Source of the DNA: Octopus sinensis
Taxonomy: Eukaryota
DNA length: 64,000 nt
Assembly: GCF_006345805.1 (NCBI RefSeq)
Contig: NC_043000.1
Span: 8,866,001-8,930,000 of the forward strand
Reading direction: 5' to 3'
This document shows, in pieces, positions 1,353-63,440 of this stretch. The notes below the pieces were generated by a model that was not told the DNA's origin, made no database searches, and saw only the letters and a program-made list of their open reading frames with translations. Position 1 is the first letter of the stretch; each line of letters opens with the position of its first letter. The translations under genes and the position numbers were made by a program.

Positions 1353-1392
1353 AAGAAATGACCGGTTTCGCTTTCAGCTTTTCAAATTTCTT
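1353..1392 (-). ncRNA. Type I hammerhead ribozyme motif, U3-A8 variant (inverted pLTR arm)
   Basis: Minus strand: aagaaat-TTGAAAA-gctgaaagc-GAAA-ccgg-TC-atttctt. Confidence 0.7.
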
Positions 1393-1408
1393 ACATCGTT
1401 ATGTTTAT

Positions 1409-1673
1409 GATACCTTTTAGTGAGCACATTGAGAAATGCGCAAAGCAACTAGTACCACAATTTTTAATCTTTCCATTTTACCAATGTGCTATCGGAACAC
1501 CAACACAAATTAGACTAAACAAGGAAACATTCTTCATTGAAAAATACAAGCCCAGACTTAACCATTCCAACATACTTATACAGAGAAATTCACTCCAAAG
1601 GAAAGACAAAAAAATTTTAAGCGATTATCTCCCTTACACCGGAAGAAATCACTTATTACCTCCCCTTATCTAG
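1409..1673 (+). pseudogene. PLE GIY-YIG endonuclease C-terminal fragment
   Basis: IPFSEHIEKCAKQLVPQFLIFPFYQC...IRLNKETFFIEKYKPRLN is the typical PLE C-terminus (R..KE..FI..YKP.LN) and is nearly identical to the 3925-4194 ORF. Confidence 0.85.
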
Positions 1674-3924: not shown

Positions 3925-4700
3925 TTAATGGGGTGAGTTTCTCTGTATAAGAATGTTAGAGTGGTTAAGTTTGGGCTTATATTTTTCAATGAAGAATGTT
4001 TCCTTGTTTAGTCTAATTTGTGTTGGTGTTCCAATAGCACATTGATAAAATGGAAAGATTAAAAATTGTGGTAGTAGTTGCTTTGCGCATTTCTCAATAT
4101 GCTCACTAAAGGGTATCATTCTGTGTTCTGGGAATGCAATCTGTTGTCGATGCAGTGTGCATCTACGTCTGAGTGATAGTCCCGTGGATCCCACGTAGTT
4201 TTGGTGGCAGCCCGAGCATCTTATAACATAAATTATGTTTTCAGAGGCACAAGTAAAATTCGATTTGATCTTGAATTTTTGTCCCTCTTTGAAGAGGAAT
4301 TCTGATCCTTCTAGAAGGTTTGGGCATGTTGCACAGTTTGGTCTACCACATTTTTTTTACTTTTGCATCCGTAATTTCAGAAAGCAATTTTGCCTTTGTG
4401 AGAATCTTTTTAAGTGATTTAGGTTGTTTGTAGCTTTTAATGATTTTATGTATGTTTAGAATTTCCTTTAATTTGGGGTCCTTATGAAGTATTGGTAAAT
4501 TCTGGCTGATGATGGAGAAGGCTTCTTTGTTTCTAGGGTTGTATGTGGATATGTAAGGCAGTATTTTCGGGGAAGGTGTGTTGTTGTGTTGAACTTTTCT
4601 CAAAGTTTCTATGTCGATTTCTGTTGCACGTCTGATCCCATCCTCTATGAGTTGAGCTGGGTAGTGTCTGTCAATTAGGGTGTTTTTGAGTTATTGTAGT
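3925..4700 (-). pseudogene. PLE polyprotein C-terminus: RT thumb, CxxC linker and GIY-YIG endonuclease, one frameshift in an A-run near 4350
   Basis: ...LPYISTYNPRNK...SYKQPKSLKKILTKAK.../CGRPNCATCPNLLEGSEF...NFTCASENIIYVIRCSGCHQNYVGSTGLSLRRRCTLHRQQI...KETFFIEKYKPKLN. Confidence 0.92.
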
Positions 4701-6965: not shown

Positions 6966-8897
6966 TTTATGCACGCCTATATAATATATTCGACGGTATA
7001 AAAAGAAGAAAAATTGCGCATACACCGGAACAGAAATATTTATACTAATATTTATATTTGCTATAAGTCGTAAACACCTCCATTACTCTCCATTACCCAA
7101 CTTGTACCAAAAAATTGATTACTTCATCACAAATACATCTGGTTTGCATTGAATTTGCTTAGCAACTTTCTTTATAAACGTATATATGAGTGACTGTAGT
7201 ACTATAGTATAGGAAGTGATAAATTGGTGTTGGTAGAATCGACATTCGATATCAGTAACTTTTCGTCTTTTTCGATATCAGTGACTTTTCATCACTGGAA
7301 AAAGGATACATATTTGCAAAGGGAGGCCTACTTTTCATCGACAACCAGTGATTGTCATACGCTGATGACGGGTCAATACCCAGAAACTCGAGTCCGTGTG
7401 TATCATATGTTAAATACGGGAAGGATGGCTTCCTTTTGCAAATACTGATAGGGCACAGAAAGCGTGTCAATAGCCAGATGGAGGAGGTGTCCTCCTGGGG
7501 CTACAAGCTACAGTAGCATCCACCCTTAGGGGTAAGCCACATTTAAGTGGCAAATATACTTCACGATGTCGTGCAGCTACTGTCTATACCTCGCTCAGAG
7601 ATTTACTATTGCTTGTTTACACATCCCCCTACAAAATATGAACCCTGATATATGTAGTTAAAAGAAATTTCTTCCATCCTTTTAGTAAAAGGTATTGGAG
7701 GGGTTGAAAGCCTAATTTTTAATCGTTTATTGATCTGTTATTTTTGCTACATACTCCCACATGACAGAGTAGGACTCAATAGAATAAGCACCAGCAATTT
7801 GCATTGATTACTTTAATTGTTTACATGATCTCGTACACAGCAACCATATCACATTAAAAAAACCTCTCATTTGCCTTGAGATTTGCGTTATGAGTACACG
7901 TATATTAAAGAAATTAGTCAACAGGATAACTTTACGCGATCATTTGACCAGCAAGAAGTAACAGCCAAATATATGTCAACTCATGCCCTACCATCTTTCA
8001 AACATGTATAGGAACATGCATTGAACTATGCAGTCCAATATACAGTATGCCTGTGATAATACGAGATGGTCATGGTGAGAAGACTTTGACTATATCTCAG
8101 TCAAACACAACTCATTTATAGCTAAACAATGACTATGAAGAATTGGTTTTGGTTCATGCTTTAAACTTTGAAGAGAAAAACTAGCGAATCATAATCGGGC
8201 AAACATGTTTACGGATCCTTCCTGAAAATATTCACTTTGACAGTTCTCTTTTCGTTCTGGTTAATTTAGTTACCTGAGAATATTTCATTGAAGCTGCCTC
8301 GATGGAAATCGAGATTATAGTCTGATTAAGCTACAAATATTTGTTAATCAATATTATTACGATTTATCCAGTGTTGATGAATTAGCGGTGAAGCTTTTAG
8401 ATTCATCACGTATTCATCACGTATTCATTCATGTATAATCGTTTCGACATTACAGCATCGCCGCCACCACCACCACCACCACCACTACTACTACTGCTAC
8501 CACCACCACCACAACCACTACTACTACTACTACTTGTAATAGATTTATTAATCGCTTTCCCAAAGTTTCACAATACTGTATCTAAGTGCTTCTGTTAAAC
8601 ACGCTGAGCTGTTAAATACAGTTGTTGCCTATTTTGGTTAATCTTAATGGTGACCAGTAAGCAGCAACTTGTACATACCACACCGTATCTTGTTTAGACA
8701 GTACAAATTTCCGAATTCACATCCCACTAGGTTTCACTTCGTCTTTATTTGCCAGTGAACCCGTTCATAGAAACAAAAGACAACCCTTTTAGGAAAGAAT
8801 ATAATTTACAGAAGCATCAAATTTACCTTCAGCATGACATCACTTTTTGTTTTCAATAGCATCTGTGGCGCAACCCTTCGTATATCAAACACATACA

Positions 8898-9272
8898 TAC
8901 TTGTTTCAGTCATTTGACTGCGGTCATGCTGGAGCACCGCCTTTAGTCGAGCAAATCGACACCAGGACTTATTCTTTTGTAAGCGTAGTATTTATTCTAT
9001 TGGTCTCTTTTGCCGAACCGCTAAGTTACGGGGACGTAAACACATCAGCATCGGTTGTCAAGCGATGCTGGAAGGACAAACACAGATACACATATATACA
9101 TATATACGACAGGCTTCTTTCAGTTTCCGTCTACCAAATCCATTCACAAGGCTTTGGTCGGCCCGAGGCTATAATAGAAGACACTTGCCCAAGGTGCCAC
9201 GCAGTGGGACTGAACCTGGAACCATGTGGTTGGTAAGCAAGCTACTTACCACACGGCCACTCCTGCGCCTAT
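8898..9272 (-). mobile_element. tRNA-derived SINE family C
   Basis: Minus-strand head ggcgcaggagTGGCCGTGTGGtaag...GGTTCAGTCCCactg (A/B boxes), body gtagacggaaactgaaagaagcc, internal microsatellite and tail ctccagcatgaccgcagtc. Confidence 0.88.
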
Positions 9273-9703
9273 ATACATACATACATGCATATATAGATAC
9301 ATACATGCATACACACATACATACGCACACGCGCGCTCACAGACATACACATACACACACACACGTTGCTGTATATCTATATAACAGTATGTTCCTCATA
9401 CCTATATGTATTTAGTACCACTCTGAAAATAGTCCTCTAACCTCTTTTTCGGAAGTTCGGGATGACGAACTAACTGATTGATTTCATTGTTACAGGAACT
9501 ACTTATTACTCCTACCGAAGAAGTCGAGGCGAAGAATACCTATTAAAATGTATACAATTATGGACCTACGCAAAACAATTATGTATATACGCACAAAAAA
9601 ATCCTCCCATATTTTAGACGGCTACTAGCATGGCACTAGTGAAGTTAGACAGGTAGTAGCAGTATTTTCATGTAATTAATGCTTTTCTGTTTTCGCTTTA
9701 TTT

Positions 9704-12889: not shown

Positions 12890-14030
12890 ATTTTATTCGA
12901 CGCTGTACTGAACCAGATAATTCAGCACCCAAAACTTAAGCGCGATACGTAAAAGAGTAAAAAGGTCACATTCTGTACACGACAGAATGTTTATTAAGTG
13001 TATACACATGTGCAATGTCAGAAAGTACGTAAACCAGTTATGCAATTTTGAAGAGGAGAGAAATAGGACAAAAAAAAGGGGGGTTAAAAAAAAGGGGGAG
13101 AGGAAAAAAAAAAAGAAAAAAAGTTGATCAATAGGGATCGTTATCACAGAAATGTCAATATGAAATGTAAAGGGGAGGACAGGTGAGGTTTACCCGTGGA
13201 AAGAAAAGCCTACGGAAAAGACCACGGTAACCTCGGTCAATGGAGTCACATGTTATATTTCTGTTTTTTTTTTTGCAAATAAGCAACTCTCTGTTTTCAA
13301 TTTCTGGGTTCATAGGATCATGCTCAAGGTGGCTTCGTCATTCATACGTGCCATTCTTGCTACATTCACCCATCTTTTTTTAAAACATTCGCTAGACAAA
13401 ACTTGCCTCTCTACTCTCACTTTCCTTTTCAAGTGGTACTTGAAGAAATTGATGAGAGATTGACCAGAGAGGAAAGTGTTTGTCTCCAATCCTTTCAGAC
13501 GCGTCCACCAGATACATTCTTTCGCCATAGCCACAAGGATGATGAAAATAGCTCTTCCTTCCCGTTTGAAGGAGGGAGGCGTGACAATATTAACGATAGA
13601 CTCAGCTGATAAACCGACTCGTCCACACGTGACAGCAGTTGTTCGACACAAGCCCACAGGTCGGAATTGTTGGACACTGCACGAGTGCGTGCAGAACGGT
13701 TTCGTCGCTCTGACCGCATCTCGGGCAGGTCGGCCCCGTGTTTCTCGAGCCGTGTCTGTAGAGCTTATCCCGAACGGGTAGCGCTTCTCGGTAGCACTGC
13801 CAGGCCAGGGATCTCTGGAAGTTGTCCATGGGTCCTGGCCCGAAAGTCGTCCTGGACAGGCGGGTCAGGTACTCCTCGTCGACGTCCAGGTTCGCCCCGA
13901 GCTCGTCGTCGTCCCTCCCCTCCACTAAACCCCTATAGAATGCTTTGGTTGTGTTGAAGTCACTCAAGGTCGACCCAGGACGGCAGAGTTGCTTGAGAGC
14001 AACGCGACACTCGCGGTGCCATTCGCCCTC
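12890..14030 (-). mobile_element. 5'-truncated non-LTR retrotransposon, L1/Tx1-like 3' end
   Basis: GC-rich coding remnant followed by a pyrimidine-rich 3' UTR with AATAAA motifs. The 5' truncation abuts a (TATC)n tract. The 3' boundary is approximate. Confidence 0.75.
13310..13967 (-). pseudogene. LINE ORF2 C-terminal zinc-knuckle (zf-RVT-like) region, one frameshift near 13660
   Basis: SLAWQCYREALPVRDKLYRHG...TCPRCGQSDETVLHALVQCP fits the W..h..LP....C..C...ET..HAL..C signature. It continues in the next frame as LWACVEQLL...ECIWWTRLK...CFKKRW. Confidence 0.85.
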
Positions 14031-26642: not shown

Positions 26643-27933
26643 CGAGGGGCGTTCAATAAGTAATGCCTCTGACCCACTTGCAGTTGTTTGATCTAGCTGA
26701 GATTTTGCATGTGCAATTATTTATATCTCTATAGATTAAGTGGCAAATTACAGCTCTGAAATAATTGTGGTTTCTGATTTACAGGTGTTTGAACTGAGTC
26801 AAGTGTGAAATGGAGCCTGTTGAGTGTCGAGCAGTGATTCGGTTTTTGTATTTGAAAGGACGCACACCACAGGAGACTTTTGATGAAATGAAAGTAACTT
26901 ATGGTGATGATGCCCCATCATATGACCTTGTAAAACGCTGGCATCGTGAATTCAAACATGGTCGGAACTCTGTGGAAACAGCTCCCAGATCTGGTCACCC
27001 CCTTCTGCCATTGATGAGGCATCTGTCCGTCAAGTTGAGGCTGCCATTTTGGAAGATCGATGCATAACTATTCGCCAAATAGCCTATGAGGTCAAGATTA
27101 GTACCGGGTCTGTGGAAACTATCATTCATGACCATTTGCATATGAAAAAGGTGTCTGCCAGATGGATTCCCAGGTTGCTCACACCTTTCCAGAAGCAAGA
27201 ACGTGTCGATTGCTCGAGGATGAATTTGGAGATGTGCCAAGAAGATGAGTCAAAATTTTTCAAAAGAATGATTACACAGGATGAAACCTGGGTTCATCAC
27301 TATGATCCAGAGTCCAAAGCCCAGTCAATGCAGTGGAAGCACCGTGACTCACCTCCTCGATAGAAGGCAAGGGTGCAGCCCTCCGCTGACAAGGTCAGGC
27401 TCACAGTCTTCTGGGACCAGGACGGAGTAGTGATGACAGATTTCCTGGCAAAGGGTGTCACAATTACAGGAGTCTATTATGCTTCACTTTTGAGGAAATT
27501 ATGAGAAGCTATCAAAATCAAGAGGTGGGGCAAGATCAGCAAAGGCATCCTCCTCCTGCAGGACAACGCTCCGGTCCACAACTTGCATGTCGCCAGATCA
27601 GAAGCACAGGCGTGCTGCTATGAACTCCTCCCCCATCCCCCTACTCTCCTGACCTTGCACCCTCTGATTTTCACCTCTTCCCAGCAATGAAGTTGTTTTT
27701 GAAAGGAAAGCATTTCACAGATGATGCAGCCTTGATTTCTGAGGTCACGTCGTGGTTGGAGGACCAAGCTGGGGTCTTCTACAAAAATGGTCTTCAGAGC
27801 TGCATCAAACGATGGAAGAAATGCGTAACTCTGGGTGGTTCCTATGTAGGAAAAGACTAATAACTGTGCCAAGTTTCGTTGCTCTACTGCTATGGGAAGT
27901 GGGCCAGGGGCATTACTTATTGAACGCCCCTCG
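26643..27933 (+). mobile_element. Full-length (1291 bp) mariner DNA transposon, inactive
   Basis: TA-flanked TIRs CGAGGGGCGTTCAATAAGTAATGCC / GGCATTACTTATTGAACGCCCCTCG, inserted in a (TATG)n tract. Confidence 0.96.
26810..27860 (+). pseudogene. Mariner DD34D transposase pseudogene
   Basis: MEPVECRAVIRFLYLKG..., WIPRLLT, TQDETWVHHYDPESK, LLQDNAPVH, YSPDLAPSDFHLF, ...GGSYVGKD*. Frameshifts near 27000 and 27640; stops at 27361 and about 27501. Confidence 0.95.
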
Positions 27934-28006
27934 TATATGCATGTATGTATGTATGTATGTATGTATGTATGTATGTATGTATGTATGTATGTATGTATGT
28001 ATGTAT

Positions 28007-28059
28007 GGCAGCGTGCGCGTACGTGTGAGTGGATATGTATTTGTATATGTGTGCGTGTA

Positions 28060-28102
<43 letters not shown>

Positions 28103-28565
28103 CTTATGTATATCTGTCTGTCTACATCTATATCTATCTATTTGTCTATCTCTCTTCCTCTCTCTCAAGAATTTATTGGAGGCTACGCACAAACATAAAT
28201 ATTTATTTGCTTGGTTCTTTAACAATTCAATAAATCAACATTAATATATATTTAATTTGAATATACATTTATTAATTTAATAACTTTATATATAAATATC
28301 AATTTTTGATTGTTTAAAACCCTGAGACCTTTCATTTCATAGCAGTTTACTAGGTCCTTCTAACTATACATGTACAAGCCTATGTATGCATGTAAGTATG
28401 TAGGTATGTATGTATGTATGTACGTATGTATGTATGTATGTACGTATGTATGTATGTTGTATGTATGTATGTATGTATGTATGTATGTATGTATGTATGT
28501 ATGTAGTATGTATGTATGGCAGCGTGCGCGTACGTGTGAGTGGATATGTATTTGTATATGTGTGC

Positions 28566-28613
<48 letters not shown>

Positions 28614-28960
28614 GCTTATGTATATCTGTCTGTCTACATCTATATCTATCTATTTGTCTATCTCTCTTCCTCTCTCTCAAGAATTTATTGGAGGCTACGC
28701 ACAAACATAAATATTTATTTGCTTGGTTCTTTAACAATTCAATAAATCAACATTAATATATATTTAATTTGAATATACATTTATTAATTTAATAACTTTA
28801 TATATAAATATCAATTTTTGATTGTTTAAAACCCTGAGACCTTTCATTTCATAGCAGTTTACTAGGTCCTTCTAACTATACATGTACAAGCCTATGTATG
28901 CATGTAAGTATGTAGGTATGTATGTATGTATGTACGTATGTATGTATGTATGTACGTATG
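28007..28960. repeat. Tandem duplication, period 511 bp, bounded by (TATG)n
   Basis: ggcagcgtgcgcgtacg at 28007 and 28518. The unique parts are nearly identical. Confidence 0.9.
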
Positions 28961-30593: not shown

Positions 30594-31625
30594 CAGTAGT
30601 AGTAGCAGTAGTAGTAGTAGTTATGGTGGTGGTGTTAGTAGTAGTGGGTTGATGGAGTCGTGGTAGTGGTGGTGGCTGTGGTTGTGTAGGTGACAATGGC
30701 GATTTGCTTTTGTCTTTTTTTCTCTCATATTGAATGATTCTGTCGTTTTTATTTAAACCTTGGTCAACCCTGTTTCAGTTGAAGACCTTCCAGTTTGTGT
30801 GTTCGTGAGTGTGTGTGTGTGTATGCGTGTGTGTGTGTGAGAGAGAGAGAGAGAGCGTATCTAGTAATACATTATCTAATACGTCTTTATCGTATGATGT
30901 AGCTCATCTTTCTAGGATGTTGTATGGATGCCATGCGTGCCCAGCATTAGCTAGACTAATAATTAACTTTTTAAAAAAATTTACTTCTAAATAATCGAAA
31001 CATGTTAGATGACGTTGGTACAGTTAAAAGGGTAGTAGAAACAATAGATTAAAGCACCTCGATTGAAAGAAATGGAACCGAAAGTGCTACACCGCAGTGT
31101 TTGGTTTTGGCCCTTCGTGACAACGTTGTATGCGTGTTTTAAAACAAAATAATCTCGCTTTAAATTTATCAACAGTTAAAATTCTACAATTTTTAAAATC
31201 TAGAATGTTTACATTTAAAATGCTTACAATTTACGCCTACATTAATTAAATTAAGTGAACTTAATTTTACTCTATCTCATTCCTTTGATTTTTATAGAAT
31301 AGAACACGTTGCGATTTATAATAACCATAACATGGTTATTAAAAACCATTTTACTTAATAGTACAATTTTTCAAAGAGAACTTCATAGGCTGTATAGCTT
31401 ATTATGATTTCTAGAAAATTGTGCAAGCTACGAATTGTCTATATACCTGTTCTCTCGTTGAAGCGAAATGAAATTCTTGTAGAGGTTGCAAAGCTGTTTA
31501 ACGGATTACTACCACTTTATTGTGCAAAATGCGATAGATAAATCTCCCACAAGTTTAAGGTCCATTGGTGTGGCGGAAGTAAATTTAGGCTGATGGTAAT
31601 AGTGCTTTCATAAAATGTGTTTTCT

Positions 31626-34600
31626 TTAGTTACCATTGTGATTTGGATCATTACTCAAACGCGCAATTAGTAACGATCCATTGTGATTTGGATCATTACT
31701 CAAACGCACAATGAGTAACGATCCATTGTGATTTGGATCGTTACTCAAACGCGCAATGAGTAACGATCCATTGTGATTTGGATCATTATTCAAACGCGCA
31801 ATGAGTAACGATACATTGTGATTTGGATCATTAGTCAAACGCACAACGAGTAACGATCCATTGTGATATGGATCATTACTCAAACGTACAATGAGTAACG
31901 ATCCAATGTGATTTGGATCATTACTCAAACGCGCAATGAGTAACGATCCATTGTGATTTGGATCATTATTCAAACGCGCAATGAGTAACGATCCATTGTG
32001 ATTTGGATCATTAGTCAAACGCACAACGAGTAACGATCCATTGTGATATGGATCATTACTCAAACGTACAATGAGTAACGATCCAATGTGATTTGGATCA
32101 TTACTCAAACGCGCAATGAGTAACGATCCATTGTGATTTGGATCATTATTCAAACGCACAATGAGTAACGATCCATTGTGATTTGGATCATTACTCAAAC
32201 GTACAACGAGTAACGATCCATTGTGATTTGGATCATTGCTCAAACGTACAACGAGTAACGATCCATTGTGATTTGGATCATTACTCAAACGTAGAACGAG
32301 TAACGATCCATTGTGATTTGGATCATTACTCAAACGTACAATGAGTAACAATCCATTGTGATTTGGATCATTACTCAAACGCGCAATGAGTAACGATCCA
32401 TTGTGATTTGGATCATTACTCAAACGCACAATGAGTAACGATCCATTGTGATTTGGATCATTACTAAAACGCACAATGAGTAACGATCCATTGTGATTTG
32501 GATCATTACTCAAACGCGCAATGAGTAACGATCCATTGTGATTTGGATCATTACTCAAACGCGCAATGAGTAACGATCCATTGTGATTTGGATCATTACT
32601 CAAACGCGCAATGAGTAACGATCCATTGTGATTTGGATCATTACTCAAACGCACAATGAGTAACGATCCCTTGTGATTTGGATCATTACTCAAACACACA
32701 ATGAGTAACGATCCATTGTGATTTGGATCATTATTCAAACGCGCAATGAGTAACGATCCATTGTGATTTGGATCATTACTCAAACGCACAATGAGTAACG
32801 ATCCATTGTGATTTGGACCATTACTCAAACGCACAATGAGTAACGATCCATTGTGATTTGGATCATTATTCAAACGCACAATGAGTAACGATCCATTGTG
32901 ATTTGGATCATTACTCAAACGCGCAATGAGTAACGATCCATTGTGATTTGGATCATTACTCAAACGCGCAATGAGTAATGATCCATTGTGATATGGATCA
33001 TTACTCAAACGCGCAATGAGTAACGATCCATTGTGATTTGGGTCATTACTCAAACGCACAAAGAGTAACGATCAATTAAGATTTGGATCATTACTCAAAC
33101 GCACAATGAGTAACGATCCATTGTGATTTGGATCATTACTCAAACGCACAATGAGTAACGATCCATTGTGATTTGGATCATTACTCAAACGCGCAATGAG
33201 TAACGATCCATTGTGATTTGGATCGTTACTCAAACGCGCAATGAGTAACGATCCATTGTGATTTGGATCATTACTCAAACACACAATGAGTAACGATCCT
33301 TTGTGATTTGGATCATTACTCAAACGCGCAATGAGTAACGATCCATTGTGATTTGGATCATTAATCAAACGTACAACGAGTAATGATCCATTGTGATTTG
33401 GATCATTACTCAAACGCGCAATGAGTAACGATCCATTGTGATTTGGATCATTACTCAAACGTACGACAAGTAATGATCCATTGTGATTTGGATCATTACT
33501 CAAACGCACAATGAGTAATGATCCATTGTGATTTGGATCATTATTCAAACGCACAATGAGTAACGATCCATTGTGATTTGGATCATTACTCAAACGCACA
33601 ATGAGTAACGATCCATTGTGATTTGGGTCATTACTCAAACGCAAAATGAGTAACGATCCATTGAGATTTGGATCATTACTCAAACGCGCAATGAGTAACG
33701 ATACATGGTGATTTGGATCATTACTCAAACGCAAAATGAGTAACGATCTATTGTGATTTGGATCATTACTCAAACGCACAATGAGTAACGATCCATGGTG
33801 ATTTGGATCATTACTCAAACGCACAATGAGTAACGATCCATTGTGATTTGGATCATTACTCAAACGCGCAATGAGTAACGATCCATTGTGATTTGGATCG
33901 TTATTCAAACGCGCAATGAGTAACGATCCATTGTGATTTGGATCATTACTCAAACGCACAATGAGTAACGATCCATTGTGATTTGGATCATTGCTCAAAC
34001 TCGCAATGAGAAACGATCCATTATGATTTGGATCATTACTCAAACGTACACCGAGTAATGATCCATTGTGATTTGGATCATTATTCAAACGCACAATGAG
34101 TAACGATCCAGTGTGATTTGGATCATTACTCAAACGCGCAATGAGTAATGTTCCATTGTGATTTCGATCATTACTCAAACGTACAACGAGTAATGATCCA
34201 TTGTGATTTGGATCATTACTCAAACGTGCAATGAGTAACGATCCATTGTGATTTGGATCATTACTCAAACGTACGAGTAATGATCCATTGTGATTTGGAT
34301 CATTACTCAAACGCACAATGAGTAATGATCCATTGTGATTTGGATCATTACTCAAATGCACAATGAGTAACGATCCATTGTGATTTGGATCGTTACTCAA
34401 ACGCACACTGAGTATCGATCCATTGTGATTTGGATCATTACTCAAACGCAGAATGAGTAACGATCCATTGTGATTTGGATCATTACTCAAACGCGCAATG
34501 AGTAACGATCCATTGTGATTTGGATCATTACTCAAACGCACAACGAGTAACGATCCATTGTGATTTGGATCATTACTCAATCGCGCAATGAGTAACGATC

Positions 34601-37454
34601 CATTGTGATTTGGATCATTACTCAAACGCACAATGAGTAACGATCCCTTGTGATTTGGATCATTACTCAAACACACAATGAGTAACGATCCATTGTGATT
34701 TGGATCATTACTCAAACGTACAACGAGTAATGATCCATTGTGATTTGGATCATTACTCAAACGCACAATGAGTAACGATCCATTGTGATTTGGATCATTA
34801 CTCAAACGCGCAATGACTAATGTTCCATTGTGATTTGGATCATTACTCAAACGTACAACGAGTAATGATCCATAGTGATTTGGATCATTACTCAAACGCG
34901 CAATGAGTAACGATCAATTGTGATTTGGATCATTACTCAAACGCACAATGAGTAATGATCCATTGTGATTTGGATCATTACTCAAACGTACAACGAGTAA
35001 TGATCCATTGTGATTTGGATCATTACTCAAACGCACAAAGAGTAACGATCCATTGTGTTTTGGATCATTACTCAAACGCGCAATGAGTAACGATCCATTG
35101 TTATTTGGATCGTTACTCAAATGCACAATGAGTGATGATCCATTGTGATTTGGATCATTACTCAAACGCGCAATGAGTAACGATCCATTGTGATTTGGAT
35201 CGTTACTCAAACGCGCAATGAGTAATGATCCATTGTTATTTGGATCATTACTCAAACGCACAATGAGTAACGATCCATTGTGATTTGGATCATTGCTCAA
35301 ACTCGCAATGAGAAACGATCCATTATGATTTGGATCATTACTCAAACGTACACCGAGTAATGATCCATTGTGATTTGGATCATTATTCAAACGCACAATG
35401 AGTAACGATCCAGTGTGATTTGGATCATTACTCAACCGCGCAATGAGTAATGTTCCATTGTGATTTCGATCATTACTCAAACGTACAACGAGTAATGATC
35501 CATTGTGATTTGGATCATTACTCAAAGTGCAATGAGTAACGATCCATTGTGATTTGGATCATTACTCAAACGTACGAGTAATGATCCATTGTGATTTGGA
35601 TCATTACTCAAACGCACAATGAGTAATGATCCATTGTGATTTGGATCATTACTCAAATGCACAATGAGTAACAACCATTGTGATTTGGATCATTACTCAA
35701 ACGCGCAATGAGTATCGATCCATTGTGATTTGGATCATTACTCAAACGTACACGAGTAATGATCCATTGTGATTTGGATCATTACTGAAACGCCACATGA
35801 GTAACGATCCATTGTGATTTGGATCATACTCAAACGCGCAATGAGTAACGATCCATTGTGATTTGGATCGTTACTCAAACGCGCAATGAGTAATGATCCA
35901 TTGTGATTTGGATCATTACTCAAACGCACAATGAGTAACGATCCATTGTGATTTGGATCATTACTCAAACGCGCAATGAGTAAGGATCCATTGTGATTTG
36001 GATCGTTACTCAAATGCACAATGAGTGATGATCCATTGTGATTTGGATTATTACTCAAACGCGCAATGAGTAACGATCCATTGTGATATGGATCATTACT
36101 CAAACGCGCAATGAGTAATGATCCATTGTGATTTGGATCGTTACGCAAACGCGCAATGAGTAATGATCCATTGTGATTTGGATCATTACTCAAACGCACA
36201 ATGAGTAACGATCCATTGTGATTTGGATCATTACTCAAACGTACAACGAGTAATGATCCATTGTGATTTGGATCATTACTCAAACGCACAATGAGTAACG
36301 ATCCATTGTGATTTGGATCATTACTCAAACGTACGAGTAAAGATCCATTGTGATTTGGATCATTACTCAAACGCACAATGAGTAACGATCCATTGTGATT
36401 TGGATCATTACTCAAACGCACAATGAGTAATGATCCATTGTGATTTGGATCATTACTCAAACGCACAATGAGTAATGATCCATTGTGATTTGGATCATTA
36501 CTCAAACGCACAATTAGTAACGATCCATTGTGATTTGGATCATTACTCAAACGCGCAATGAGTAATGATCCATTGTGTATTGGATCGTTACTCAAATGCG
36601 CAATGAATATTGATCCATTGTGATTTGGATCATTACTCAAACGCACAATGAGTAACGATCCATTGTGATTTGGATCATTACTCAAACGCGCAATGAGTAC
36701 TGATCCATTGTGATTTGGATCATTACTCAAACGCGCAATGAGTAATTATCCATTGTGATTTGGATCGTTACTCAAACGCGCAATGAGTAATGATCCATTG
36801 TGATTTGGATCGTTACTCAAACGCGCAATGAGCAATGATCCATTGTGATTTGGATCATTACTCAAACGCACAATGAGGAATGATCCATTGTGATTTGGAT
36901 CGTTACTCAAACGCACAATGAGTAATGATCCATTGTGATTGGGATCGTTACTCAAACGCACAATGAGTAATGATCCATTGTTTTTTGGATCGTTACTCAA
37001 ACGCGCAATTATTAACGATCCATTGTGATTTGGATCGTTACTCAAACGCGCAATGAGTAATGATCCATTGTGATTTGGATCGTTACTCAAACGCACAATG
37101 AGTAATGATCCATTGTGATTAGGATCGTTACTCAAACGCACAATGAGTAACGATCCATTGTGATTTGGATCGTTACTCAAACGCACAATGAGTAATGTAA
37201 TTGATGATTGTGATTGGATCGTTACTCAAACGCACAATGAGTAATGATCCATCGTGATTTGGATCGTTACTCAAACGCACAATGAGTAACGATCCATTGT
37301 GATTTGGATCGTTACTCAAACGCACAATGAGTAATGATCCATTGTGATTTGGATCGTTACTCAAACGCGCAATGATTAACGATCCATTGTGATTTGGATC
37401 GTTACTCAAACGCACAATGTGTAATGATCCATTGTGATTTGGATCGTTACTCAT
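31626..37454 (-). repeat. 45-bp tandem array (about 129 units) with internal dyad symmetry; minus strand open as a 15-aa repeat (RLSNDPNHNGSLLI[V/A])
   Basis: Consensus + strand TGGATC(A/G)TTACTCA-AACGC(A/G)CAA-TGAGTAA(C/T)GATCCA-TTGTGATT. ORF segments of 93, 146, 330, 203, 607 and 477 aa. Confidence 0.95.
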
Positions 37455-40400
37455 CGTACGTTTGTGTTGAAACGTTCGTCATGAATGGTGGAGCCTGAAG
37501 GTATTTTTGTCGTACCTTGTATAAAATACTTTTCAAAAAGAACAATTCGCCGAAGATTGGGGACTTTGATAGCCATAATAAATATTCTTTCGTATGAAAA
37601 AGTTAGTTATGAACACATGAACACAGATGAAGAAGTTAACTCCTGGACAGAAGACAAGCGACTTAATTGAATTTATAATGCTAAACAAGAAATTCGTTTA
37701 ACAGCAGACACTGGAAATGTAGATGCGAGTTGGATTTAGCGTGTGCTAGAATTGGATGGCCGTAATAAGCTAGAGGTTAGTCTTGGATCTAATTCCCAGA
37801 AACCCAATATCGCCCCTAAACCCAACTCTGTTTTGAGACTGGTATCAATAATCTAAAATGTGAAAATGTAATAGCTCATGAATTTATCATTAAGGAGTTA
37901 AATATTTTGTATCCGGAGTAAGACTATGGCTGTTCAAAAACTTTAACAATCACCTCCTTTACACATAAAATATATAAAATATGGAGTAAAGCCAAGATAA
38001 TTTTCTCGCTTTAAATTTATCATCAACACATAACAAGGATTTCCCACTGTATATTTGAATTTAAGATGTTTACAATTTACTTCTAAATTAATAATTAGGT
38101 CGTTAATTAAATGATGTCAAGTTAATTTTACTCTATCTCGTTCCTTTTATTTTTATCGATTAGAATTATTACTGGATTCAATAAAATGAGAACCACTCAA
38201 GTTCTGAAACAGATTTAATCAACCGGTCATCCTTCCTACTCAAATTTTATGACTATGAATCGCTCTACTTAATCCAAAGCGGAGTGTAACCACCATATAG
38301 CCCTTACCTTAGCTGAACACACTCTGCCTTTTCTTTGCACTCATGCCAGGTCTCCGGTCTGAAGATTTCCTCCTTTCCTTTCCCCCAGTTACGAAATTCT
38401 TGGAAAATGCTATGGGTCCTGCCTTTCCTACTCTGAGGAAGTCAAGTCACATAAAAAGAAATCACGCTTTTGAAACCATAGTAGAAACCGTCTTAAACTG
38501 ACGCTTCCCGACTGATTTATCTCCTTTGTCATTCTAACAAACTTCTAACAGAATCTTACTCGATATTGAGGAGCCCCTTATCAAAAGACGAGATGGATTC
38601 TTTCTTGGTATACCAACAAGGAACGAATGCAAAGTTAAATATTTTAGGATGCATAACAAATTCTGAACACTTTCAAAATTCCTAATATTTTCTGTTATTA
38701 GACCATACTCTGAAGTTCAAGTAACAAATAATCTAAGGGTTGCAGTAAAATATTCTTCAAAAACTAAATACTTCCCTAAAACTGAAGAATTTGACCTTAA
38801 ACATTAACATTGTTGGCTCTATACTACTCGACTGAAGAATATGCATGCCTATTTTAGGCTAGATTTTCAAACAAGATTTTTGGCAACGGTTCTCAACGAG
38901 ACACCGATATATGACTGGTTGTTTCAAGGCTACTAATATAAATAATCTTTGTGTTAGAAGGCATTACTCTATCTGAGAGATGTTGCCAGCAGAGCAGAAA
39001 AACAAATCCAGATGTCTGATGAAAGATATGTATTATATGGATATTTGCAAACACAAGAATACATTAAAATCACAAAAGAGTTTCATCATATCTACCACCT
39101 TTTTTGCAATTTCCATAGTTTAGTTTTTTGGCTATATCCACATGATGAAATGTTTTACTTCATAAAATGTTTAATAAATAAATCAGTAGTAATATCATGC
39201 AGCTGATTTCTAAAAAGAATGATATAGTGCTCTACTGGATTACCACCGACTAAAAATTCTAAGCGTTTCGTAATAAGTAAACGAAATTAAATACTTGGAT
39301 TCTTTTCATCTTTTTCCTTATAATGCATTAATTTCAATTTCAAAATTCTAATCACGCCAAATATCAATAAGAAATTATCATTCCTCTTATAATAACTACG
39401 TTTACAAAAGGATAGCACGGAATAATATATATTCTACCGTTATAAAAAATGCAAGTAACAGAAAATATATCAAAGGTTTCGAAATTCACATTGTGGAGTG
39501 ATTGCTTTAGGCCCTCTACCATTAATACACGTTATCTCTTGGTTGACATTGCTCCAATACGTGGATAGATTGACAAGCAAAGCGAAAAAACATAAGAAGT
39601 TTAATGAAAAGCACCAGTATTTATTATTGTTGCTTAGTCCCAGGTCAGCTCTGATTATCAAAAGAGCAACTCTATTGTCAAAAGCGTTCCAGCCGTAAGT
39701 AAACATGCCGTATTTTTTCCCTTTATGCAAAGAACCCAGAACTACACTAAAGCATCGATAGTTATTGTCATTTTTGTTTACCACCGAGTTAGTCCCGATC
39801 AAGCAGACGAGAAACCATATTGGCTGGCAAAAAAGTCTTCCATCCATGAACAGCGTGTATTTTTGAATATGCAAAGAACACAGGACTACATTATCTGGCG
39901 TGAAATTTGAGAGATTTGGCTGCTATTTCCAGATCGATCGTGTGTATGTATTTATTCGTCAATGTTGATTCATTGCTTATGACAAGAATGGAAAAAATAT
40001 AAACACTAACTATAAATAAATAAACAGAATGTATGTTTAAAAATTATAACAACAGCAGAAGCAACAGCAGTAGCAGTCGCAGTAGCAGCAGCAGCAGTGG
40101 CAGCAGAAAGGAGAGCATTGTTAACGGGCAATAATAATATACATGAACACTCAGTAAAAATCCACGCTCATATTCGTTTGCACTCCGTCATTGCAAGTGT
40201 GTTCTTGCACAGCAATTAAACCTTCTCAGAATCTCCTTATGGTTTTTAATGGCCACCGAATGACAAAAGAACCAAACCGTATTCGGTGCGAGGGGTGGGA
40301 TAGAAAGTTTGGACTTCAGTATTGATCTTAATTATGACTATTACGATGATCATGGTGGTGATAAGAGTGGTAGTGATGGAGATGGCGGTGGTGGTGGTGG

Positions 40401-41000: not shown

Positions 41001-41249
41001 ATATATATATATATATATATTCAAATTCAAATTACGATTGACATAAACAAACAAATGAGGTTTGCTTTAGAAGCGTTGAGATGTCGTAGAAAGTTAAAGA
41101 AGTGATTTTAAATTCTCAAATGCAGGATAATGCTAATAATATAGCCTGAACAGAATAAGCCACCCCTATTTTGCAGAAAAAAGTGTTGGCGGCCGGCTAT
41201 GCTACTCCCATATATATTTATTTATATGTATATATATTATTCTTTTATT

Positions 41250-41622
41250 CTTTTATTTGTTTCAGTCATTTGTACGGGAGCACAGCCTTTAGTCGAACAA
41301 ACCTACCAGAGGACTTATTCTTTGTAAGACTAGTACTTGTTCTGCCAGTCTCTTATTGCCGAAACGCGAAGTTACGGGGACGTAAACACACCAACATCGG
41401 TTATCGCGCGAATGTGGGAGGAAAAACACAGAAACACGAACATATACATATATATACGACGGGCTTCTTTCCGTTTCCATCTATCAAATCCACTCAGAAG
41501 TCTTTGGTCGGCCGGAGGCTATAGTAGAAGACACTTGCTCAAGGTGCCACGCAGTGGGATTGAACTCAGAGCCATGTGGGTGGTTAGCAAGCTCCTTACC
41601 ACACACCCACACCTGCACCTAT
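41250..41622 (-). mobile_element. SINE family C
   Basis: Colinear with 8898-9272. Confidence 0.88.
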
Positions 41623-45084: not shown

Positions 45085-45343
45085 TTATTCTGTCGGTTTC
45101 TTATACTGAACCGCTAAGTTACGGGTAATCAAACCAACACCGATTGTTAACAAATGCACACACACATAGATGTATACATATACATACGCGACGAGCTTCT
45201 TTCAGTTTCCGTCAACCAAATCCACTCAGAAGGCTTTGATCGGCCCGTCGCTATGGTAGAAAACACGTGAGCAAGGTTCCACGCGGTGGTATTGAACCCG
45301 GAACCATGTACTTGGGAAGCAAACGTCTTACCACACAGCCACT
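45085..45343 (-). mobile_element. SINE family C, partial
   Basis: ctttcagtttccgtc..ccaaatccactca..aaggcttt core. Confidence 0.8.
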
Positions 45344-46110: not shown

Positions 46111-46790
46111 TATAGGCGCAGATGTGGCTGTGTGCTAGGGAGTTTGCTTCTGAACCATACGGTTCCTGTTTCAATCCCGCTGCAAGGCAGCTAAAGCAAG
46201 TATCTCTTACAGTAGTCCCGGGCCTACCGAAGCCATGTGGAGAGATTTGGTAGATGGAAACAGAAAGAAGCCCGTGTGTATTTATGTATGTGTGTGTGTG
46301 TATTTATATGTGTGTGTATCTATAAGTGTGTGTGTATCTGTGTGCGTATCTATGTGTGTGTGTGTATCTATATGAGTGTGTGTATCTATATGTGTGTATA
46401 TGTGTATCTATATGAGTGTCTGTAACTATGTGTGTGTGTGTATCTATGAGTGTGTGTATCTATTTGTGCGTATGTGTGTGTATCTATATGAGTGTGTGAA
46501 CTATGTCTGTGTGTATCTATATGACTGTGCGCATCTATGTGTGTGTGTATTTATATGTGGGTGTATCTATGTGTGTGTATCTGTGTGTTTATGTTTGTCC
46601 CCCTCCACCACCTCTTTACAATCGGTGTTGGCTTGTTTTTGTCCCCGTAACTTAGCCGTTCGGCAAAAGTGCCCGACAGGAAATGTGCCAAGCTTAAAAG
46701 ATAAGTGCTGGTTTCGAGTTGTTCGGTTAAAGACATTAATCAGTGCCCCAGCATGGTGGCAGTCCAATGATTGAAACAGTTCAAACAAAA
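46111..46790 (+). mobile_element. SINE family C with a roughly 330-bp expanded internal (TG/TA) microsatellite
   Basis: Head tataggcgcagatgtggctgtgtg, body to aagaagcccgt, the expansion, then tail ttagccgttcggcaaaag...ccccagcatgg. Confidence 0.85.
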
Positions 46791-47221: not shown

Positions 47222-47310
47222 CACTCCTCATCAGTCTCCAACTAGTAGGCCACTCCTCATCAGTCTCCAACTAGTAGGCCACTCCTCATCAGTCTCCAAC
47301 TAGTAGGCCA
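47222..47310. repeat. 3 x 29-bp perfect tandem repeat carrying CTGATGA on the minus strand
   Basis: Unit cactcctcatcagtctccaactagtaggc. Confidence 0.9.
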
Positions 47311-60994: not shown

Positions 60995-61235
60995 TTTTAT
61001 TCTATTACTTCTTTCAGTTATTTGACTGAAGCCATGCTGGAGCACCGCCTTGAAGGGTCTTAGTCAAAGATCTCGAAACCAACGACTTTTTCCTTTTAAG
61101 CCTAATACTTAGTCTATCGGGCTCTTCTTCAATATTAGTACCTTACACTTCTGAAATTCCAGTTGTCGCTAGAGAGATTTCCATCGTTTTCGATATAGGA
61201 CAAAAAGTTTAACAATTAAAGAAAACGGAGAATAC

Positions 61236-61277
<42 letters not shown>

Positions 61278-61476
61278 ATATATAAATATATAAAGATATA
61301 TATATTATGCGACGAGCTTCTTTCAGTTTCCGTCTACCTAATTCACTCACAAGGCTTTGGTCGATCCGAGGCTATAGTAGAAGACACTTGTCCCCAAGAT
61401 GACACGCAGTGGGACTGAACCCGGAACGATATGGTTGGGAAGCAATATTCTTACCTCTCCTCCACGTCAGCACCTA
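60995..61476 (-). mobile_element. SINE family C, interrupted, with internal (TA)n
   Basis: Tail gccatgctggagcaccgcctt at about 61030; body and head at 61305-61476. Confidence 0.8.
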
Positions 61477-62770: not shown

Positions 62771-63440
62771 AATGCCCTGATGCAGTACCAGGCAATGCCC
62801 TGATGCAGTACCAGGCAATGCCCTGATGCAGTACCAGGCAATACCCTGATGCAGTACCAGTAAAATGCCCTGATGCAGTACCAGGCAATGCCCTGATGCA
62901 GTACCAGGCAGAGGCTCTCATGGCTTCTGATCTTAACTGATTGGAAGTGTTATCATGTACATTGTTCTGTCTTGGTATAAAAGATGGGCTACAGCAATAT
63001 TCTGCTCAATACCACAGATTTGCTTGTCAGTTGTTTGACTTAACCAGTTAAGCATGTCCCCTATGGCTGACGATATGTGCATCTCTGATCACGAGCAGAA
63101 GTAGTGGGAGTGCATCATAGCCATGTGTTGAGAGGGATTCTTTGGGGTTTGAATAATTCATCTCTGGAGACATGGGTGGGTTTTCAACATCCTTAAACAA
63201 CCCTTATTCAGGGACCGTTTTGAGCGGGATGGGCTACTCACCTGAAGAAAATTCTAACTGGGCCCCACCTGCAAGGTCATGTGCAGTTTATCTTGATATG
63301 AGATCACCATGCCGCGCACATATGGTTGTGATGCATGTGCCTGGTGTGCCCTTATCAGACGGGTAGTCATGATGGGTATATTGGGCTTCGTATATTTTAC
63401 CCCAGTGTCACTTTGATGGCATGCTCTGCTCGCTCACTCA
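62771..63440 (-). mobile_element. 670-bp non-coding interspersed element embedded in (AAT)n, with 6 x 23-bp terminal tandem repeat
   Basis: Unit aatgccctgatgcagtaccaggc at 62771-62909. Sharp boundaries with (AAT)n on both sides. The orientation is inferred. Confidence 0.65.

What the first reader, a model, noticed from the sequence alone, without database searches (positions are those of the whole stretch)
31626..37454. 45-bp array with recombination-site-like dyad architecture: 14-bp inverted arms with alternately flipped spacers
Seen: unit = A' (TGGATCRTTACTCA) + S1 (AACGCRCAA, 9 nt) + A (TGAGTAAYGATCCA) + S2 (TTGTGATT, 8 nt). A and A' are reverse complements, and S2 is nearly the reverse complement of S1 (AATCACAA versus AACGCACAA). 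Every arm can therefore pair with either neighbour, giving two alternative registers of about 129 hairpins or cruciforms on either strand, or one long branched dsRNA. Known: a 13-14-bp inverted pair around an 8-bp asymmetric spacer is the geometry of loxP/FRT-type sites and of dimeric protein operators. Inferred: the array arose by iterative template switching or inversion from a 22-23-bp proto-unit, and may act as a protein-binding, structural or small-RNA locus. The recombinase analogy is geometric only.
Basis: partly seen in the sequence, partly recalled or inferred. Interest (0 to 1): 0.7.

Follow-up and report, generated by a model that had tools for sequence, protein, structure and literature searches.

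The report
Hairpin-prone 45-bp satellite in octopus DNA
This is a 5.8-kb non-coding tandem array of a 45-bp unit with two 14-bp inverted arms, in an octopus genome, and every test I could run points to an ordinary, slowly decaying satellite, not a recombination, protein-binding or RNA locus.

Summary
Window 31626-37453 holds about 129 head-to-tail copies of a 45-bp unit: A' 14, S1 9, A 14, S2 8. The arms are reverse complements, 13/14 in the consensus and 14/14 once one CpG is restored. Single strands are predicted to fold far better than shuffles.

The window is octopus DNA: it is microsatellite-rich, its SINE-like repeat matches Octopus vulgaris and O. bimaculoides, and it shares dispersed repeats with an O. 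vulgaris chromosome.

The functional reading finds no support.
- Neighbouring arms pair slightly worse than randomly re-paired arms.
- Only 12-16 of 120 stems are perfect.
- Arms are no better conserved than spacers.
- 57% of differences lie in eight CpG columns.
- No spacer is ever flipped.
- No solitary site exists in the window.
- The 20 longest flanking ORFs show no recombinase domain.
- No Rfam family passes threshold.
- The one open frame is trivial and has no relatives.

The proposed 22-23-bp head-to-head proto-unit predicts self-complementary spacers. They pair at 0/4 and 0/4.

Verdict: an interstitial satellite or minisatellite with a dyad-symmetric monomer. It is a new member of a known kind and of low interest. 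Genome-wide copy number, transcription and binding could not be tested here.

The parts
31626..31643 (+). Degenerate partial first unit (GTTAC-CATTGTGATT) at the left edge of the array
   Evidence: Local alignment of the flank to the consensus matches only CCATTGTGATT / GTTAC-CATTGTG. Nothing unit-like lies further left.
31644..37453 (+). Tandem array of the 45-bp unit A'(14)-S1(9)-A(14)-S2(8). It has 129 A' arms and ends flush after an A' arm. All units and spacers are in one orientation.
   Evidence: TRF: period 45, 129.6 copies, 92% matches. Unit table. Arm order and spacer lengths: A-to-A' is 8 bp in 126 cases, A'-to-A is 9 bp in 121 cases, and no spacer is flipped. Mean pairwise unit identity is 91.8%, with no higher-order repeat.
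32364..32408 (+). Example of a canonical unit: A' 32364-32377, S1 32378-32386, A 32387-32400, S2 32401-32408
   Evidence: Sequence read. Register taken.
31824..32183 (+). Local segmental duplication inside the array: a block of 4 units repeated at a lag of 4 units, 3 of them exactly identical
   Evidence: Run of 3 identical units at lag 4 in the unit distance matrix. The 4-unit block (unit labels 4,5,6,7 then 4,5,6,8) is visible.
33939..35420 (+). Second internal duplication: a block starting at 33939 recurs at 35241, 29 units away. It carries the shared 42-bp deletion variant.
   Evidence: Run of identical units at lag 29. Unit labels 28,29,30..,32..,34,22 occur twice. Identical 42-mers lie at 34254 and 35555.
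31148..31309 (+). Left copy of a direct repeat of about 165 bp that brackets the array and its unique flanks
   Evidence: Pairwise alignment. nhmmer finds only these two copies in the window and in all fetched loci, E 1e-38 and 1e-44. Identity is about 77% over ungapped columns.
37998..38170 (+). Right copy of the same direct repeat, 545 bp beyond the array

Best explanation
This is a non-coding, interstitial satellite or minisatellite array in an octopus genome.

**Origin (inferred).** A short hairpin-forming sequence, two perfect 14-bp inverted arms around a 9-nt loop with an 8-nt linker, was amplified head-to-tail. The usual tandem-repeat processes would do this: replication slippage or fork stalling at hairpins, unequal exchange, and block duplication.

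**Later history (shown).** The array has since drifted. Most changes are transitions at the four CpG dinucleotides of the unit. A few variants were copied locally in blocks of 4 and of about 8 units.

**Role of the dyad symmetry.** It is a property of the founder sequence and probably helps the array expand or contract. The sequence shows no sign that pairing, a protein site or an RNA product is being maintained by selection.

Shown: anatomy, orientation, mutation pattern, lack of compensation, lack of coding or RNA-family signal, and host taxon. Inferred: the amplification mechanism and the absence of function.
For: - **Tandem, unidirectional and sharply bounded:**
- **Non-coding:**
  - Only 1 of 6 frames is open, and 93% of shuffled units have at least one open frame.
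  - Units of 44 and 49 bp break the frame.
  - The common variants change amino acids.
  - No relatives in 5.8 billion proteins.
  - The exhaustive 1.84-billion-protein search found only unrelated proteins with a 15-residue period.
- **Decay pattern:**
  - 179 transitions against 68 transversions.
  - 57% of differences fall in the 8 CpG columns: 14.7% non-consensus there, 2.4% elsewhere.
- **No constraint on pairing:**
  - Adjacent arms pair worse than re-paired arms in both registers.
  - At pair 7/31: A.C 71, A-T 25, G.T 15, G-C 8.
  - Non-CpG variability: A' 1.7%, S1 1.7%, A 3.3%, S2 2.5%.
- **No regular higher-order repeat,** only two local block duplications.
- **Eukaryotic, octopus context:**
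  - 143 TRF rows in 64 kb.
  - Fragments of mariner, Penelope-like and non-LTR elements.
  - SINE-like repeat 83-88% identical to O. vulgaris and O. bimaculoides predicted proteins.
  - Many shared dispersed repeats with O. vulgaris OX597820.1.
- **Known kind of feature:**
  - Kasinathan & Henikoff 2018 (PMC5889037) report that dyad symmetries shorter than 10 bp are common in centromeric satellites.
  - A Tribolium madens study (PMC13081366) lists the rarer satellites with longer intra-monomer inverted repeats.
Against: - Only one array could be examined. Copy number, chromosomal distribution, transcription, chromatin and methylation are unknown.
- 14-bp arms filling 62% of a 45-bp monomer is a stronger dyad than the symmetries under 10 bp usual in satellites.
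- The minus strand folds better than the plus strand, because the commonest arm mismatch becomes a G.U/G.T wobble there. One could read that as strand-specific constraint. It is equally what a single amplified CpG transition gives.
- The extra complementarity between the two spacers (P 0.003-0.03) is not explained by simple amplification.
- A direct repeat of about 165 bp brackets the array, so the array may belong to a larger unit.
Confidence: 0.75

Rival explanations
1. The array is the internal tandem-repeat region of a larger low-copy unit: a mobile element, or a segmental duplicate, bounded by the direct repeats of about 165 bp at 31148-31309 and 37998-38170. Such a unit would carry and spread the array. 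This is compatible with the main explanation for the array itself.
For: The two repeat copies lie in the same orientation on either side of the array. They are the only copies in the 64-kb window and in 20 kb of O. vulgaris sequence. The array has sharp edges.
Against: - The copies are only about 77-80% identical and have indels.
- Their ends are fuzzy, with no TG..CA termini.
- No primer-binding site, polypurine tract or target-site duplication is obvious (by eye).
- No coding capacity lies between them.
- Two copies of an uncommon dispersed repeat could lie there by chance.
Confidence: 0.15
2. The array is transcribed and works as an RNA locus. A long hairpin or dsRNA would feed endo-siRNA or piRNA production, or act as a substrate or sponge for ADAR editing, which is very active in octopus nervous tissue.
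For: Predicted three-unit RNA folds reach -59 to -63 kcal/mol on the minus strand (z -9 to -11), and both strands beat every shuffle. The commonest arm mismatch is a G.U wobble on the minus strand.
Against: - No compensation in the arms.
- Stems are only 14 bp, separated by 8-9-nt loops.
- Only chance-level miRNA matches, 21-26 bits against gathering scores of 63-99, and none at the gathering threshold.
- No expression data and no promoter evidence.
- Any palindromic repeat folds well.
Confidence: 0.07
3. The array is a battery of binding sites for a dimeric DNA-binding protein or a site-specific (tyrosine) recombinase. Each site would be 14-bp inverted arms around an 8- or 9-bp asymmetric spacer, as in loxP or FRT.
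For: The geometry matches: 14+9+14 and 14+8+14. S2 and the non-CpG arm columns are 97-98% uniform.
Against: - Arms are not better conserved than spacers.
- 90% of the dyads are imperfect.
- No spacer is ever inverted.
- No solitary site with up to 2 mismatches elsewhere in the window.
- No integrase, recombinase or other DNA-binding domain beyond a decayed mariner fragment 4 kb away, in the 20 flanking ORFs scanned.
- Directly repeated lox-like sites 45 bp apart would be collapsed by their recombinase rather than kept as about 129 copies (inference).
Confidence: 0.04
4. The array is a structural chromosomal satellite, centromeric or heterochromatic, whose cruciform or non-B DNA helps to specify chromatin.
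For: Dyad-rich satellites are proposed to mark centromeres (PMC5889037; PMC13081366). The DNA hairpins are predicted to be stable.
Against: The array is 5.8 kb. It lies between ordinary interspersed repeats and microsatellites on both sides, so it looks interstitial. It shows no higher-order repeat or recent homogenisation. Its chromosomal position is unknown.
Confidence: 0.05
5. The array encodes a repetitive protein, (LSNDPNHNGSLLIAR)n, on the minus strand.
For: Minus-strand ORFs of 477, 607, 203, 330 and 146 aa cover most of the array.
Against: - An open frame is expected by chance.
- The frame is broken by 44- and 49-bp units.
- The common variants change amino acids.
- There is no methionine in the repeat.
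- No homologues.
- The ORF is not a called gene in the collection.
Confidence: 0.01

Closest known systems
Satellite DNAs with intra-monomer dyad symmetry. Examples: the short dyads of Old World monkey, chicken and horse centromeric satellites; and the rarer long ones in Tribolium madens TmSat2, T. brevicornis and Trichogramma brassicae.
   Same: A head-to-tail non-coding array whose monomer contains inverted repeats predicted to form hairpins or cruciforms.
   Different: - The monomer here is very short (45 bp), and the inverted arms take 28 of its 45 bp.
- The array is small (5.8 kb) and looks interstitial.
- No link to a centromere is known.
- No array-level (macro-dyad) inversion is present.
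Classical minisatellites (VNTR loci, units of 10-100 bp)
   Same: Unit length, array size of a few kb, interstitial position, internal variant units, block duplications, and unit-length variants produced by slippage.
   Different: Many vertebrate minisatellites are GC-rich and not palindromic. This unit is 38% GC and strongly dyad-symmetric.
loxP / FRT tyrosine-recombinase target sites
   Same: Two inverted arms of 13-14 bp around an asymmetric 8-bp spacer (from memory for loxP and FRT; for this unit).
   Different: - Here there are about 258 overlapping sites in tandem.
- No recombinase was found.
- There are no inverted spacers and no solitary sites.
- The arms are under no detectable constraint.
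Foldback-type elements and palindromic AT-rich repeats (PATRR)
   Same: Sequences whose single strands snap back, and which are prone to replication errors and rearrangement.
   Different: Foldback elements have long terminal inverted arrays, and PATRRs are single palindromes of several hundred bp. Here the whole array has one orientation, and only the 14-bp arms are inverted.

Membership tests
Satellite / minisatellite DNA | Head-to-tail tandem repetition of one unit, all in one orientation | tested here: met
   129.6 copies of a 45-bp unit, 92% matches. The arms alternate strictly and no spacer is flipped.
Satellite / minisatellite DNA | Non-coding | tested here: met
   The single open frame is trivial. 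The frame is broken by indel units. No protein relatives were found.
Satellite / minisatellite DNA | Present as many arrays, or a notable fraction of the genome (needed to call it a satellite rather than a single VNTR locus) | not testable with these tools
   No eukaryotic genome can be searched by DNA here. Exact 20-mer scans of metagenome, prokaryote and viral collections gave only single chance matches. No other copy exists in the window.
loxP/FRT-type recombination site | 13-14-bp inverted arms around a 6-8-bp asymmetric spacer | tested here: met
   14+8+14 and 14+9+14. Neither spacer is self-complementary. This is a match of geometry only.
loxP/FRT-type recombination site | A cognate tyrosine recombinase encoded nearby or in the element | tested here: inconclusive
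   Pfam on 20 ORFs around the array found only mariner HTH_48, GIY-YIG and zf-RVT. Short or spliced genes and the rest of the genome were not covered.
loxP/FRT-type recombination site | Footprints of recombination: inverted segments, or solitary or paired sites at element borders | tested here: not met
   None of about 129 S1 and about 129 S2 spacers is inverted. No solitary arm or half-unit with up to 2 mismatches exists elsewhere in the window.
Structured RNA / miRNA hairpin cluster | Match to a curated RNA family, or base pairs kept by compensatory change | tested here: not met
   No Rfam match at the gathering threshold. Only 21-26-bit chance hits against cut-offs of 63-99 bits. Pairing is no better than in shuffles.
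Centromeric dyad-symmetric satellite | [quoted passage not shown] | tested here: met
   DNA hairpins of -8.6 to -8.8 kcal/mol, z -4.8 to -6.4.
Centromeric dyad-symmetric satellite | Centromeric location or CENP-A association, with large homogenised arrays | not testable with these tools
   Position and chromatin are unknown. What can be seen argues against it: a 5.8-kb array, no higher-order repeat, and ordinary interspersed repeats on both sides.
MITE / foldback transposon-derived repeat | Terminal inverted repeats with target-site duplication, and the arms recurring as element ends | tested here: not met
   The flanks share no inverted repeat. The only similarity between the flanks is a direct repeat. 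The arms do not occur outside the array.

The most novel reading that the evidence does not exclude
The array is one member of an octopus-specific family of transcribed hairpin repeats. Its minus-strand RNA would fold into long, wobble-tolerant duplexes that are processed into small RNAs or soak up ADAR, tying a satellite to the unusually heavy RNA editing or small-RNA biology of coleoid cephalopods.
Probability: 0.06. Interest if true: 0.65.

Novelty: new member of a known kind. Interest (0 to 1): 0.22.

Why it matters
As it stands it matters little. It adds one undescribed tandem-repeat family to a group, the octopods, for which I found no satellite DNA survey in the paper library. No paper there contains the monomer sequence.

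It is a clean textbook case of a very short monomer dominated by a hairpin. It could be useful as a FISH or cytogenetic marker, and as a natural substrate for studying how hairpin-prone repeats expand.

It would matter more if arrays proved to be transcribed or bound by a specific protein, or if the 165-bp flanking repeats showed that arrays travel inside a mobile unit.

Tried and rejected
- **Coding repeat.** Rejected.
- **Compensatory evolution of the arms.** Tested three ways: a contingency table at pair 7/31, counts of single and double changes, and re-pairing shuffles in both registers and with wobble on either strand. None shows an excess; the sign is slightly negative.
- **Head-to-head dimer origin from a 22-23-mer.** Rejected, because the spacers are not self-complementary. 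An ungapped rotation test of whole-unit palindromy was uninformative: 26/45 matches, reached by 6% of shuffles.
- **Higher-order repeat.** None. My first raw-lag analysis was spoiled by indels, so I redid it on units.
- **More copies elsewhere.**
  - None in the window.
  - Metagenome, prokaryotic-genome and viral scans gave only isolated chance 20-mers.
  - Three fetched eukaryotic loci have none.
  - Eukaryotic genomes cannot be searched by DNA with these tools.
- **Degenerate units beyond the array edges.** None above shuffle level.
- **Recombinase or other gene next to the array.** None found.
- **Species identification.**
  - The mariner fragment was uninformative: its best named relative is a mantis shrimp at 85%, and O. 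sinensis is only 63%.
  - The SINE-like ORF gave Octopus. The genus and species of the window remain unresolved.
- **Rfam.** Nothing real in either gathering or permissive mode.


Full report

Yes. Tandem Repeats Finder gives a single array at 31633-37453: period 45, 129.6 copies, 92% matches.

- Anchoring on the arm TGGATCATTACTCA finds 129 copies. They are spaced 45 bp apart in 120 cases. The rest are 42-bp units (3), 44-bp units (4, one inside a fused 89-mer) and one 49-bp unit.
- The array starts with a degenerate part-unit at about 31626 and ends flush after an A' arm at 37453. Nothing unit-like above shuffle level lies beyond either edge.
- The arms are complementary at 13/14 positions in the consensus, and 14/14 if the CpG at columns 6-7 is restored.
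- 'S2 is about rc(S1)' holds as 7 matches plus one gap. The probability is 0.003 against random spacers for the consensus and 0.028 for the CpG-restored form, and the test is post hoc. Concretely, it is a third inverted pair: CACAATG (19-25) and CATTGTG (36-42).
- Predicted folding is far better than shuffles. DNA hairpins give -8.8 and -8.6 kcal/mol (z -6.4 and -4.8). The CpG-restored hairpin gives -13.9 kcal/mol.
- Three-unit RNAs give -45 to -49 kcal/mol on the plus strand and -59 to -63 kcal/mol on the minus strand (z -5.7 to -10.8).

**2. Where are we?**

The window is eukaryotic and comes from an octopus.

- It holds 143 tandem-repeat rows in 64 kb, is about 35% GC, and has no tRNA or Rfam hit.
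- It carries decayed fragments of three mobile elements:

| Element | Window position | Pfam evidence |
|---|---|---|
| mariner | 26798-27857 | HTH_48 |
| Penelope-like | 3928-4690 | GIY-YIG, E 4e-4 |
| non-LTR retrotransposon | about 13605-13967 | zf-RVT |

- A SINE-like repeat, present at about 8.9, 41.3 and 61.3 kb, translates to a peptide 83-88% identical to 'hypothetical predicted proteins' of Octopus vulgaris and O. bimaculoides.
- The window shares dozens of dispersed repeats, at 70-88% identity, with a 20-kb piece of O. vulgaris chromosome OX597820.1. It shares essentially none with two other eukaryotic contigs fetched through the mariner.
- The species is not resolved.

**3. What the array looks like inside**

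- Mean pairwise unit identity is 91.8%. There is no regular higher-order repeat. There are only two local block duplications: a 4-unit block at lag 4 starting at 31824 (3 of its units exactly identical), and a block at 33939 that recurs at 35241, 29 units away.
- Differences from the consensus are 179 transitions and 68 transversions.
- 57% of the differences fall in the eight columns that form the unit's four CpG dinucleotides. Non-consensus frequency is 14.7% there and 2.4% elsewhere.
- At non-CpG columns the arms are no better kept than the spacers: A' 1.7%, S1 1.7%, A 3.3%, S2 2.5%.
- CpG observed/expected is 1.42 in the array and 0.88 in the rest of the window. The variation therefore looks like ordinary CpG transition plus copying of a few variants, not site-specific constraint.

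**4.

They are not.

- Pair 7/31 is the only arm pair that varies often. It reads A.C in 71 units, A-T in 25, G.T in 15 and G-C in 8. The odds ratio for G with C is 0.20 (P 0.001), the opposite of compensation.
- Over all 14 pairs, adjacent arms are Watson-Crick paired in 90.5% of cells with S1 as the loop and 90.7% with S2 as the loop. Randomly re-paired arms give 91.3%. The observed value is reached by 2000/2000 and 1989/2000 shuffles.
- Counting wobble pairs on either strand does not change this.
- Only 12 and 16 of 120 stems are perfect, against an expected 21 or so.
- The better folding of the minus strand arises because the commonest mismatch (A.C on plus) is G.T/G.U on minus. That is what one amplified CpG transition in one arm produces.

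**5. Other functional readings**

- *Recombination sites.* The geometry (14+8+14, 14+9+14) does resemble loxP and FRT. However, no spacer is ever inverted, 0 of about 129 for each type. No solitary arm or half-unit exists elsewhere in the window. The 20 longest flank ORFs scanned show no recombinase or other DNA-binding domain beyond the decayed mariner.
- *RNA.* Nothing passes the Rfam gathering threshold. In permissive mode there are only 21-26-bit miRNA-like hits against cut-offs of 63-99 bits.
- *Coding.* The minus-strand frame (LSNDPNHNGSLLIAR)n is open for 146-607 aa stretches, but this means little:
  - One open frame in six is what 93% of shuffled units give.
  - The frame is broken by the 44- and 49-bp units.
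  - The common variants change amino acids.
  - The word-indexed search found no relatives.
  - The exhaustive search returned only unrelated proteins that also have a 15-residue period, at most 49% identity over short stretches.
  - The ORF is not a called gene in the collection.

**6. Origin**

A head-to-head dimer repeated in tandem has its dyad axes at the two junctions, which here would be the centres of S1 and S2. Both spacers should then be self-complementary. They are not: 0/4 and 0/4 pairs. The unit has the interleaved form a-b-a'-b', which a simple inverted duplication does not give.

The simplest reading is that a 37-bp hairpin sequence plus an 8-bp linker was amplified. The partial complementarity of the two spacers is unexplained and only modestly significant.

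**7. A possible larger unit**

A direct repeat of about 165 bp lies at 31148-31309 and 37998-38170, about 77-80% identical. It brackets the array together with 330 bp and 545 bp of unique flank. It has no other copy in the window or in the fetched loci. The array may therefore sit inside an old mobile or duplicated unit of about 6.9 kb. I saw no LTR hallmarks. This needs a genome-wide look.

**8. Comparison with what is known**

- Short dyad symmetries are common in centromeric satellites (PMC5889037).
- Longer intra-monomer inverted repeats are rarer but described in Tribolium and Trichogramma (PMC13081366).
- This array works like those: a hairpin-prone tandem repeat. It is much shorter in unit and array, looks interstitial, and has no array-level inversion.
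- It fits the definition of a minisatellite or satellite on every feature I could test. The one I could not test is genomic abundance.
- It fails the testable footprints of a recombination-site system and of an RNA family.
- No paper in the library contains the monomer, and I found no octopus satellite survey.

**9. Verdict**

The anatomy is correct. The functional and origin inferences are not supported by any available test.

- Most likely (0.75): an ordinary, drifting, non-coding tandem array whose dyad symmetry is inherited from its founder sequence and may aid its own expansion.
- Classification: new member of a known kind.
- Interest: low (0.22).
- Most novel reading still open: a transcribed hairpin-repeat family linked to small-RNA or ADAR biology in octopus. 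Probability about 0.06.

Noticed in passing
window 31148-31309 and 37998-38170: A direct repeat of about 165 bp, 77-80% identical with indels, brackets the array and its unique flanks, about 6.9 kb in all. These are its only two copies in the window and in the fetched loci. It may mark a larger mobile or duplicated unit.
   Followed up: partly
window 26798-27857 (+): A decayed mariner-type transposase, frameshifted into at least three ORFs (HTH_48, E 4e-10). Its closest named relatives are in a mantis shrimp (Oratosquilla oratoria, 85%). Octopus sinensis copies are only 63% identical, and abalone and crab copies lie between. This patchy spread suggests horizontal transfer.
   Followed up: partly
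window 3928-4690 (-) and 1362-1670 (+): A Penelope-like element fragment with a GIY-YIG nuclease domain (E 4e-4, just under Pfam's cut-off). A partial copy of its C-terminal part lies in inverted orientation 2.3 kb away.
   Followed up: partly
window about 8840-9410, 41160-41620, 61170-61460; also about 45150-45340 and 46120-46780: A SINE-like dispersed repeat shared with Octopus vulgaris and O. bimaculoides. Several copies run straight into a microsatellite (ATAC, TA or GT runs), as if the element seeds or carries simple repeats.
   Followed up: partly
window 27936-28250 and 28381-28756: Two adjacent near-copies of a composite block, (TATG)n + GTGTGAGTGGATATATA + (TA)n + unique tail, about 445 bp apart. 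The block is a local tandem duplication that includes microsatellites.
   Followed up: no
window 47222-47310: A perfectly identical 29-bp repeat (3.1 copies, 100% matches): CACTCCTCATCAGTCTCCAACTAGTAGGC. It looks very young compared with the 92% identity of the 45-bp array.
   Followed up: no
window 62771-62910: A 23-bp minisatellite (6 copies, 93% matches; AATGCCCTGATGCAGTACCAGGC) lies directly after a 540-bp (AAT)n run.
   Followed up: no
window 13605-13967 (-): The C-terminal zinc-binding domain of a non-LTR retrotransposon reverse transcriptase (zf-RVT, E 3e-7). It abuts a 295-bp (AGAT)n microsatellite.
   Followed up: no
whole window: Simple-repeat density is extreme: 143 TRF rows in 64 kb, with several microsatellites of 300-690 bp. 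CpG depletion is only mild (observed/expected 0.88 outside the array).
   Followed up: partly
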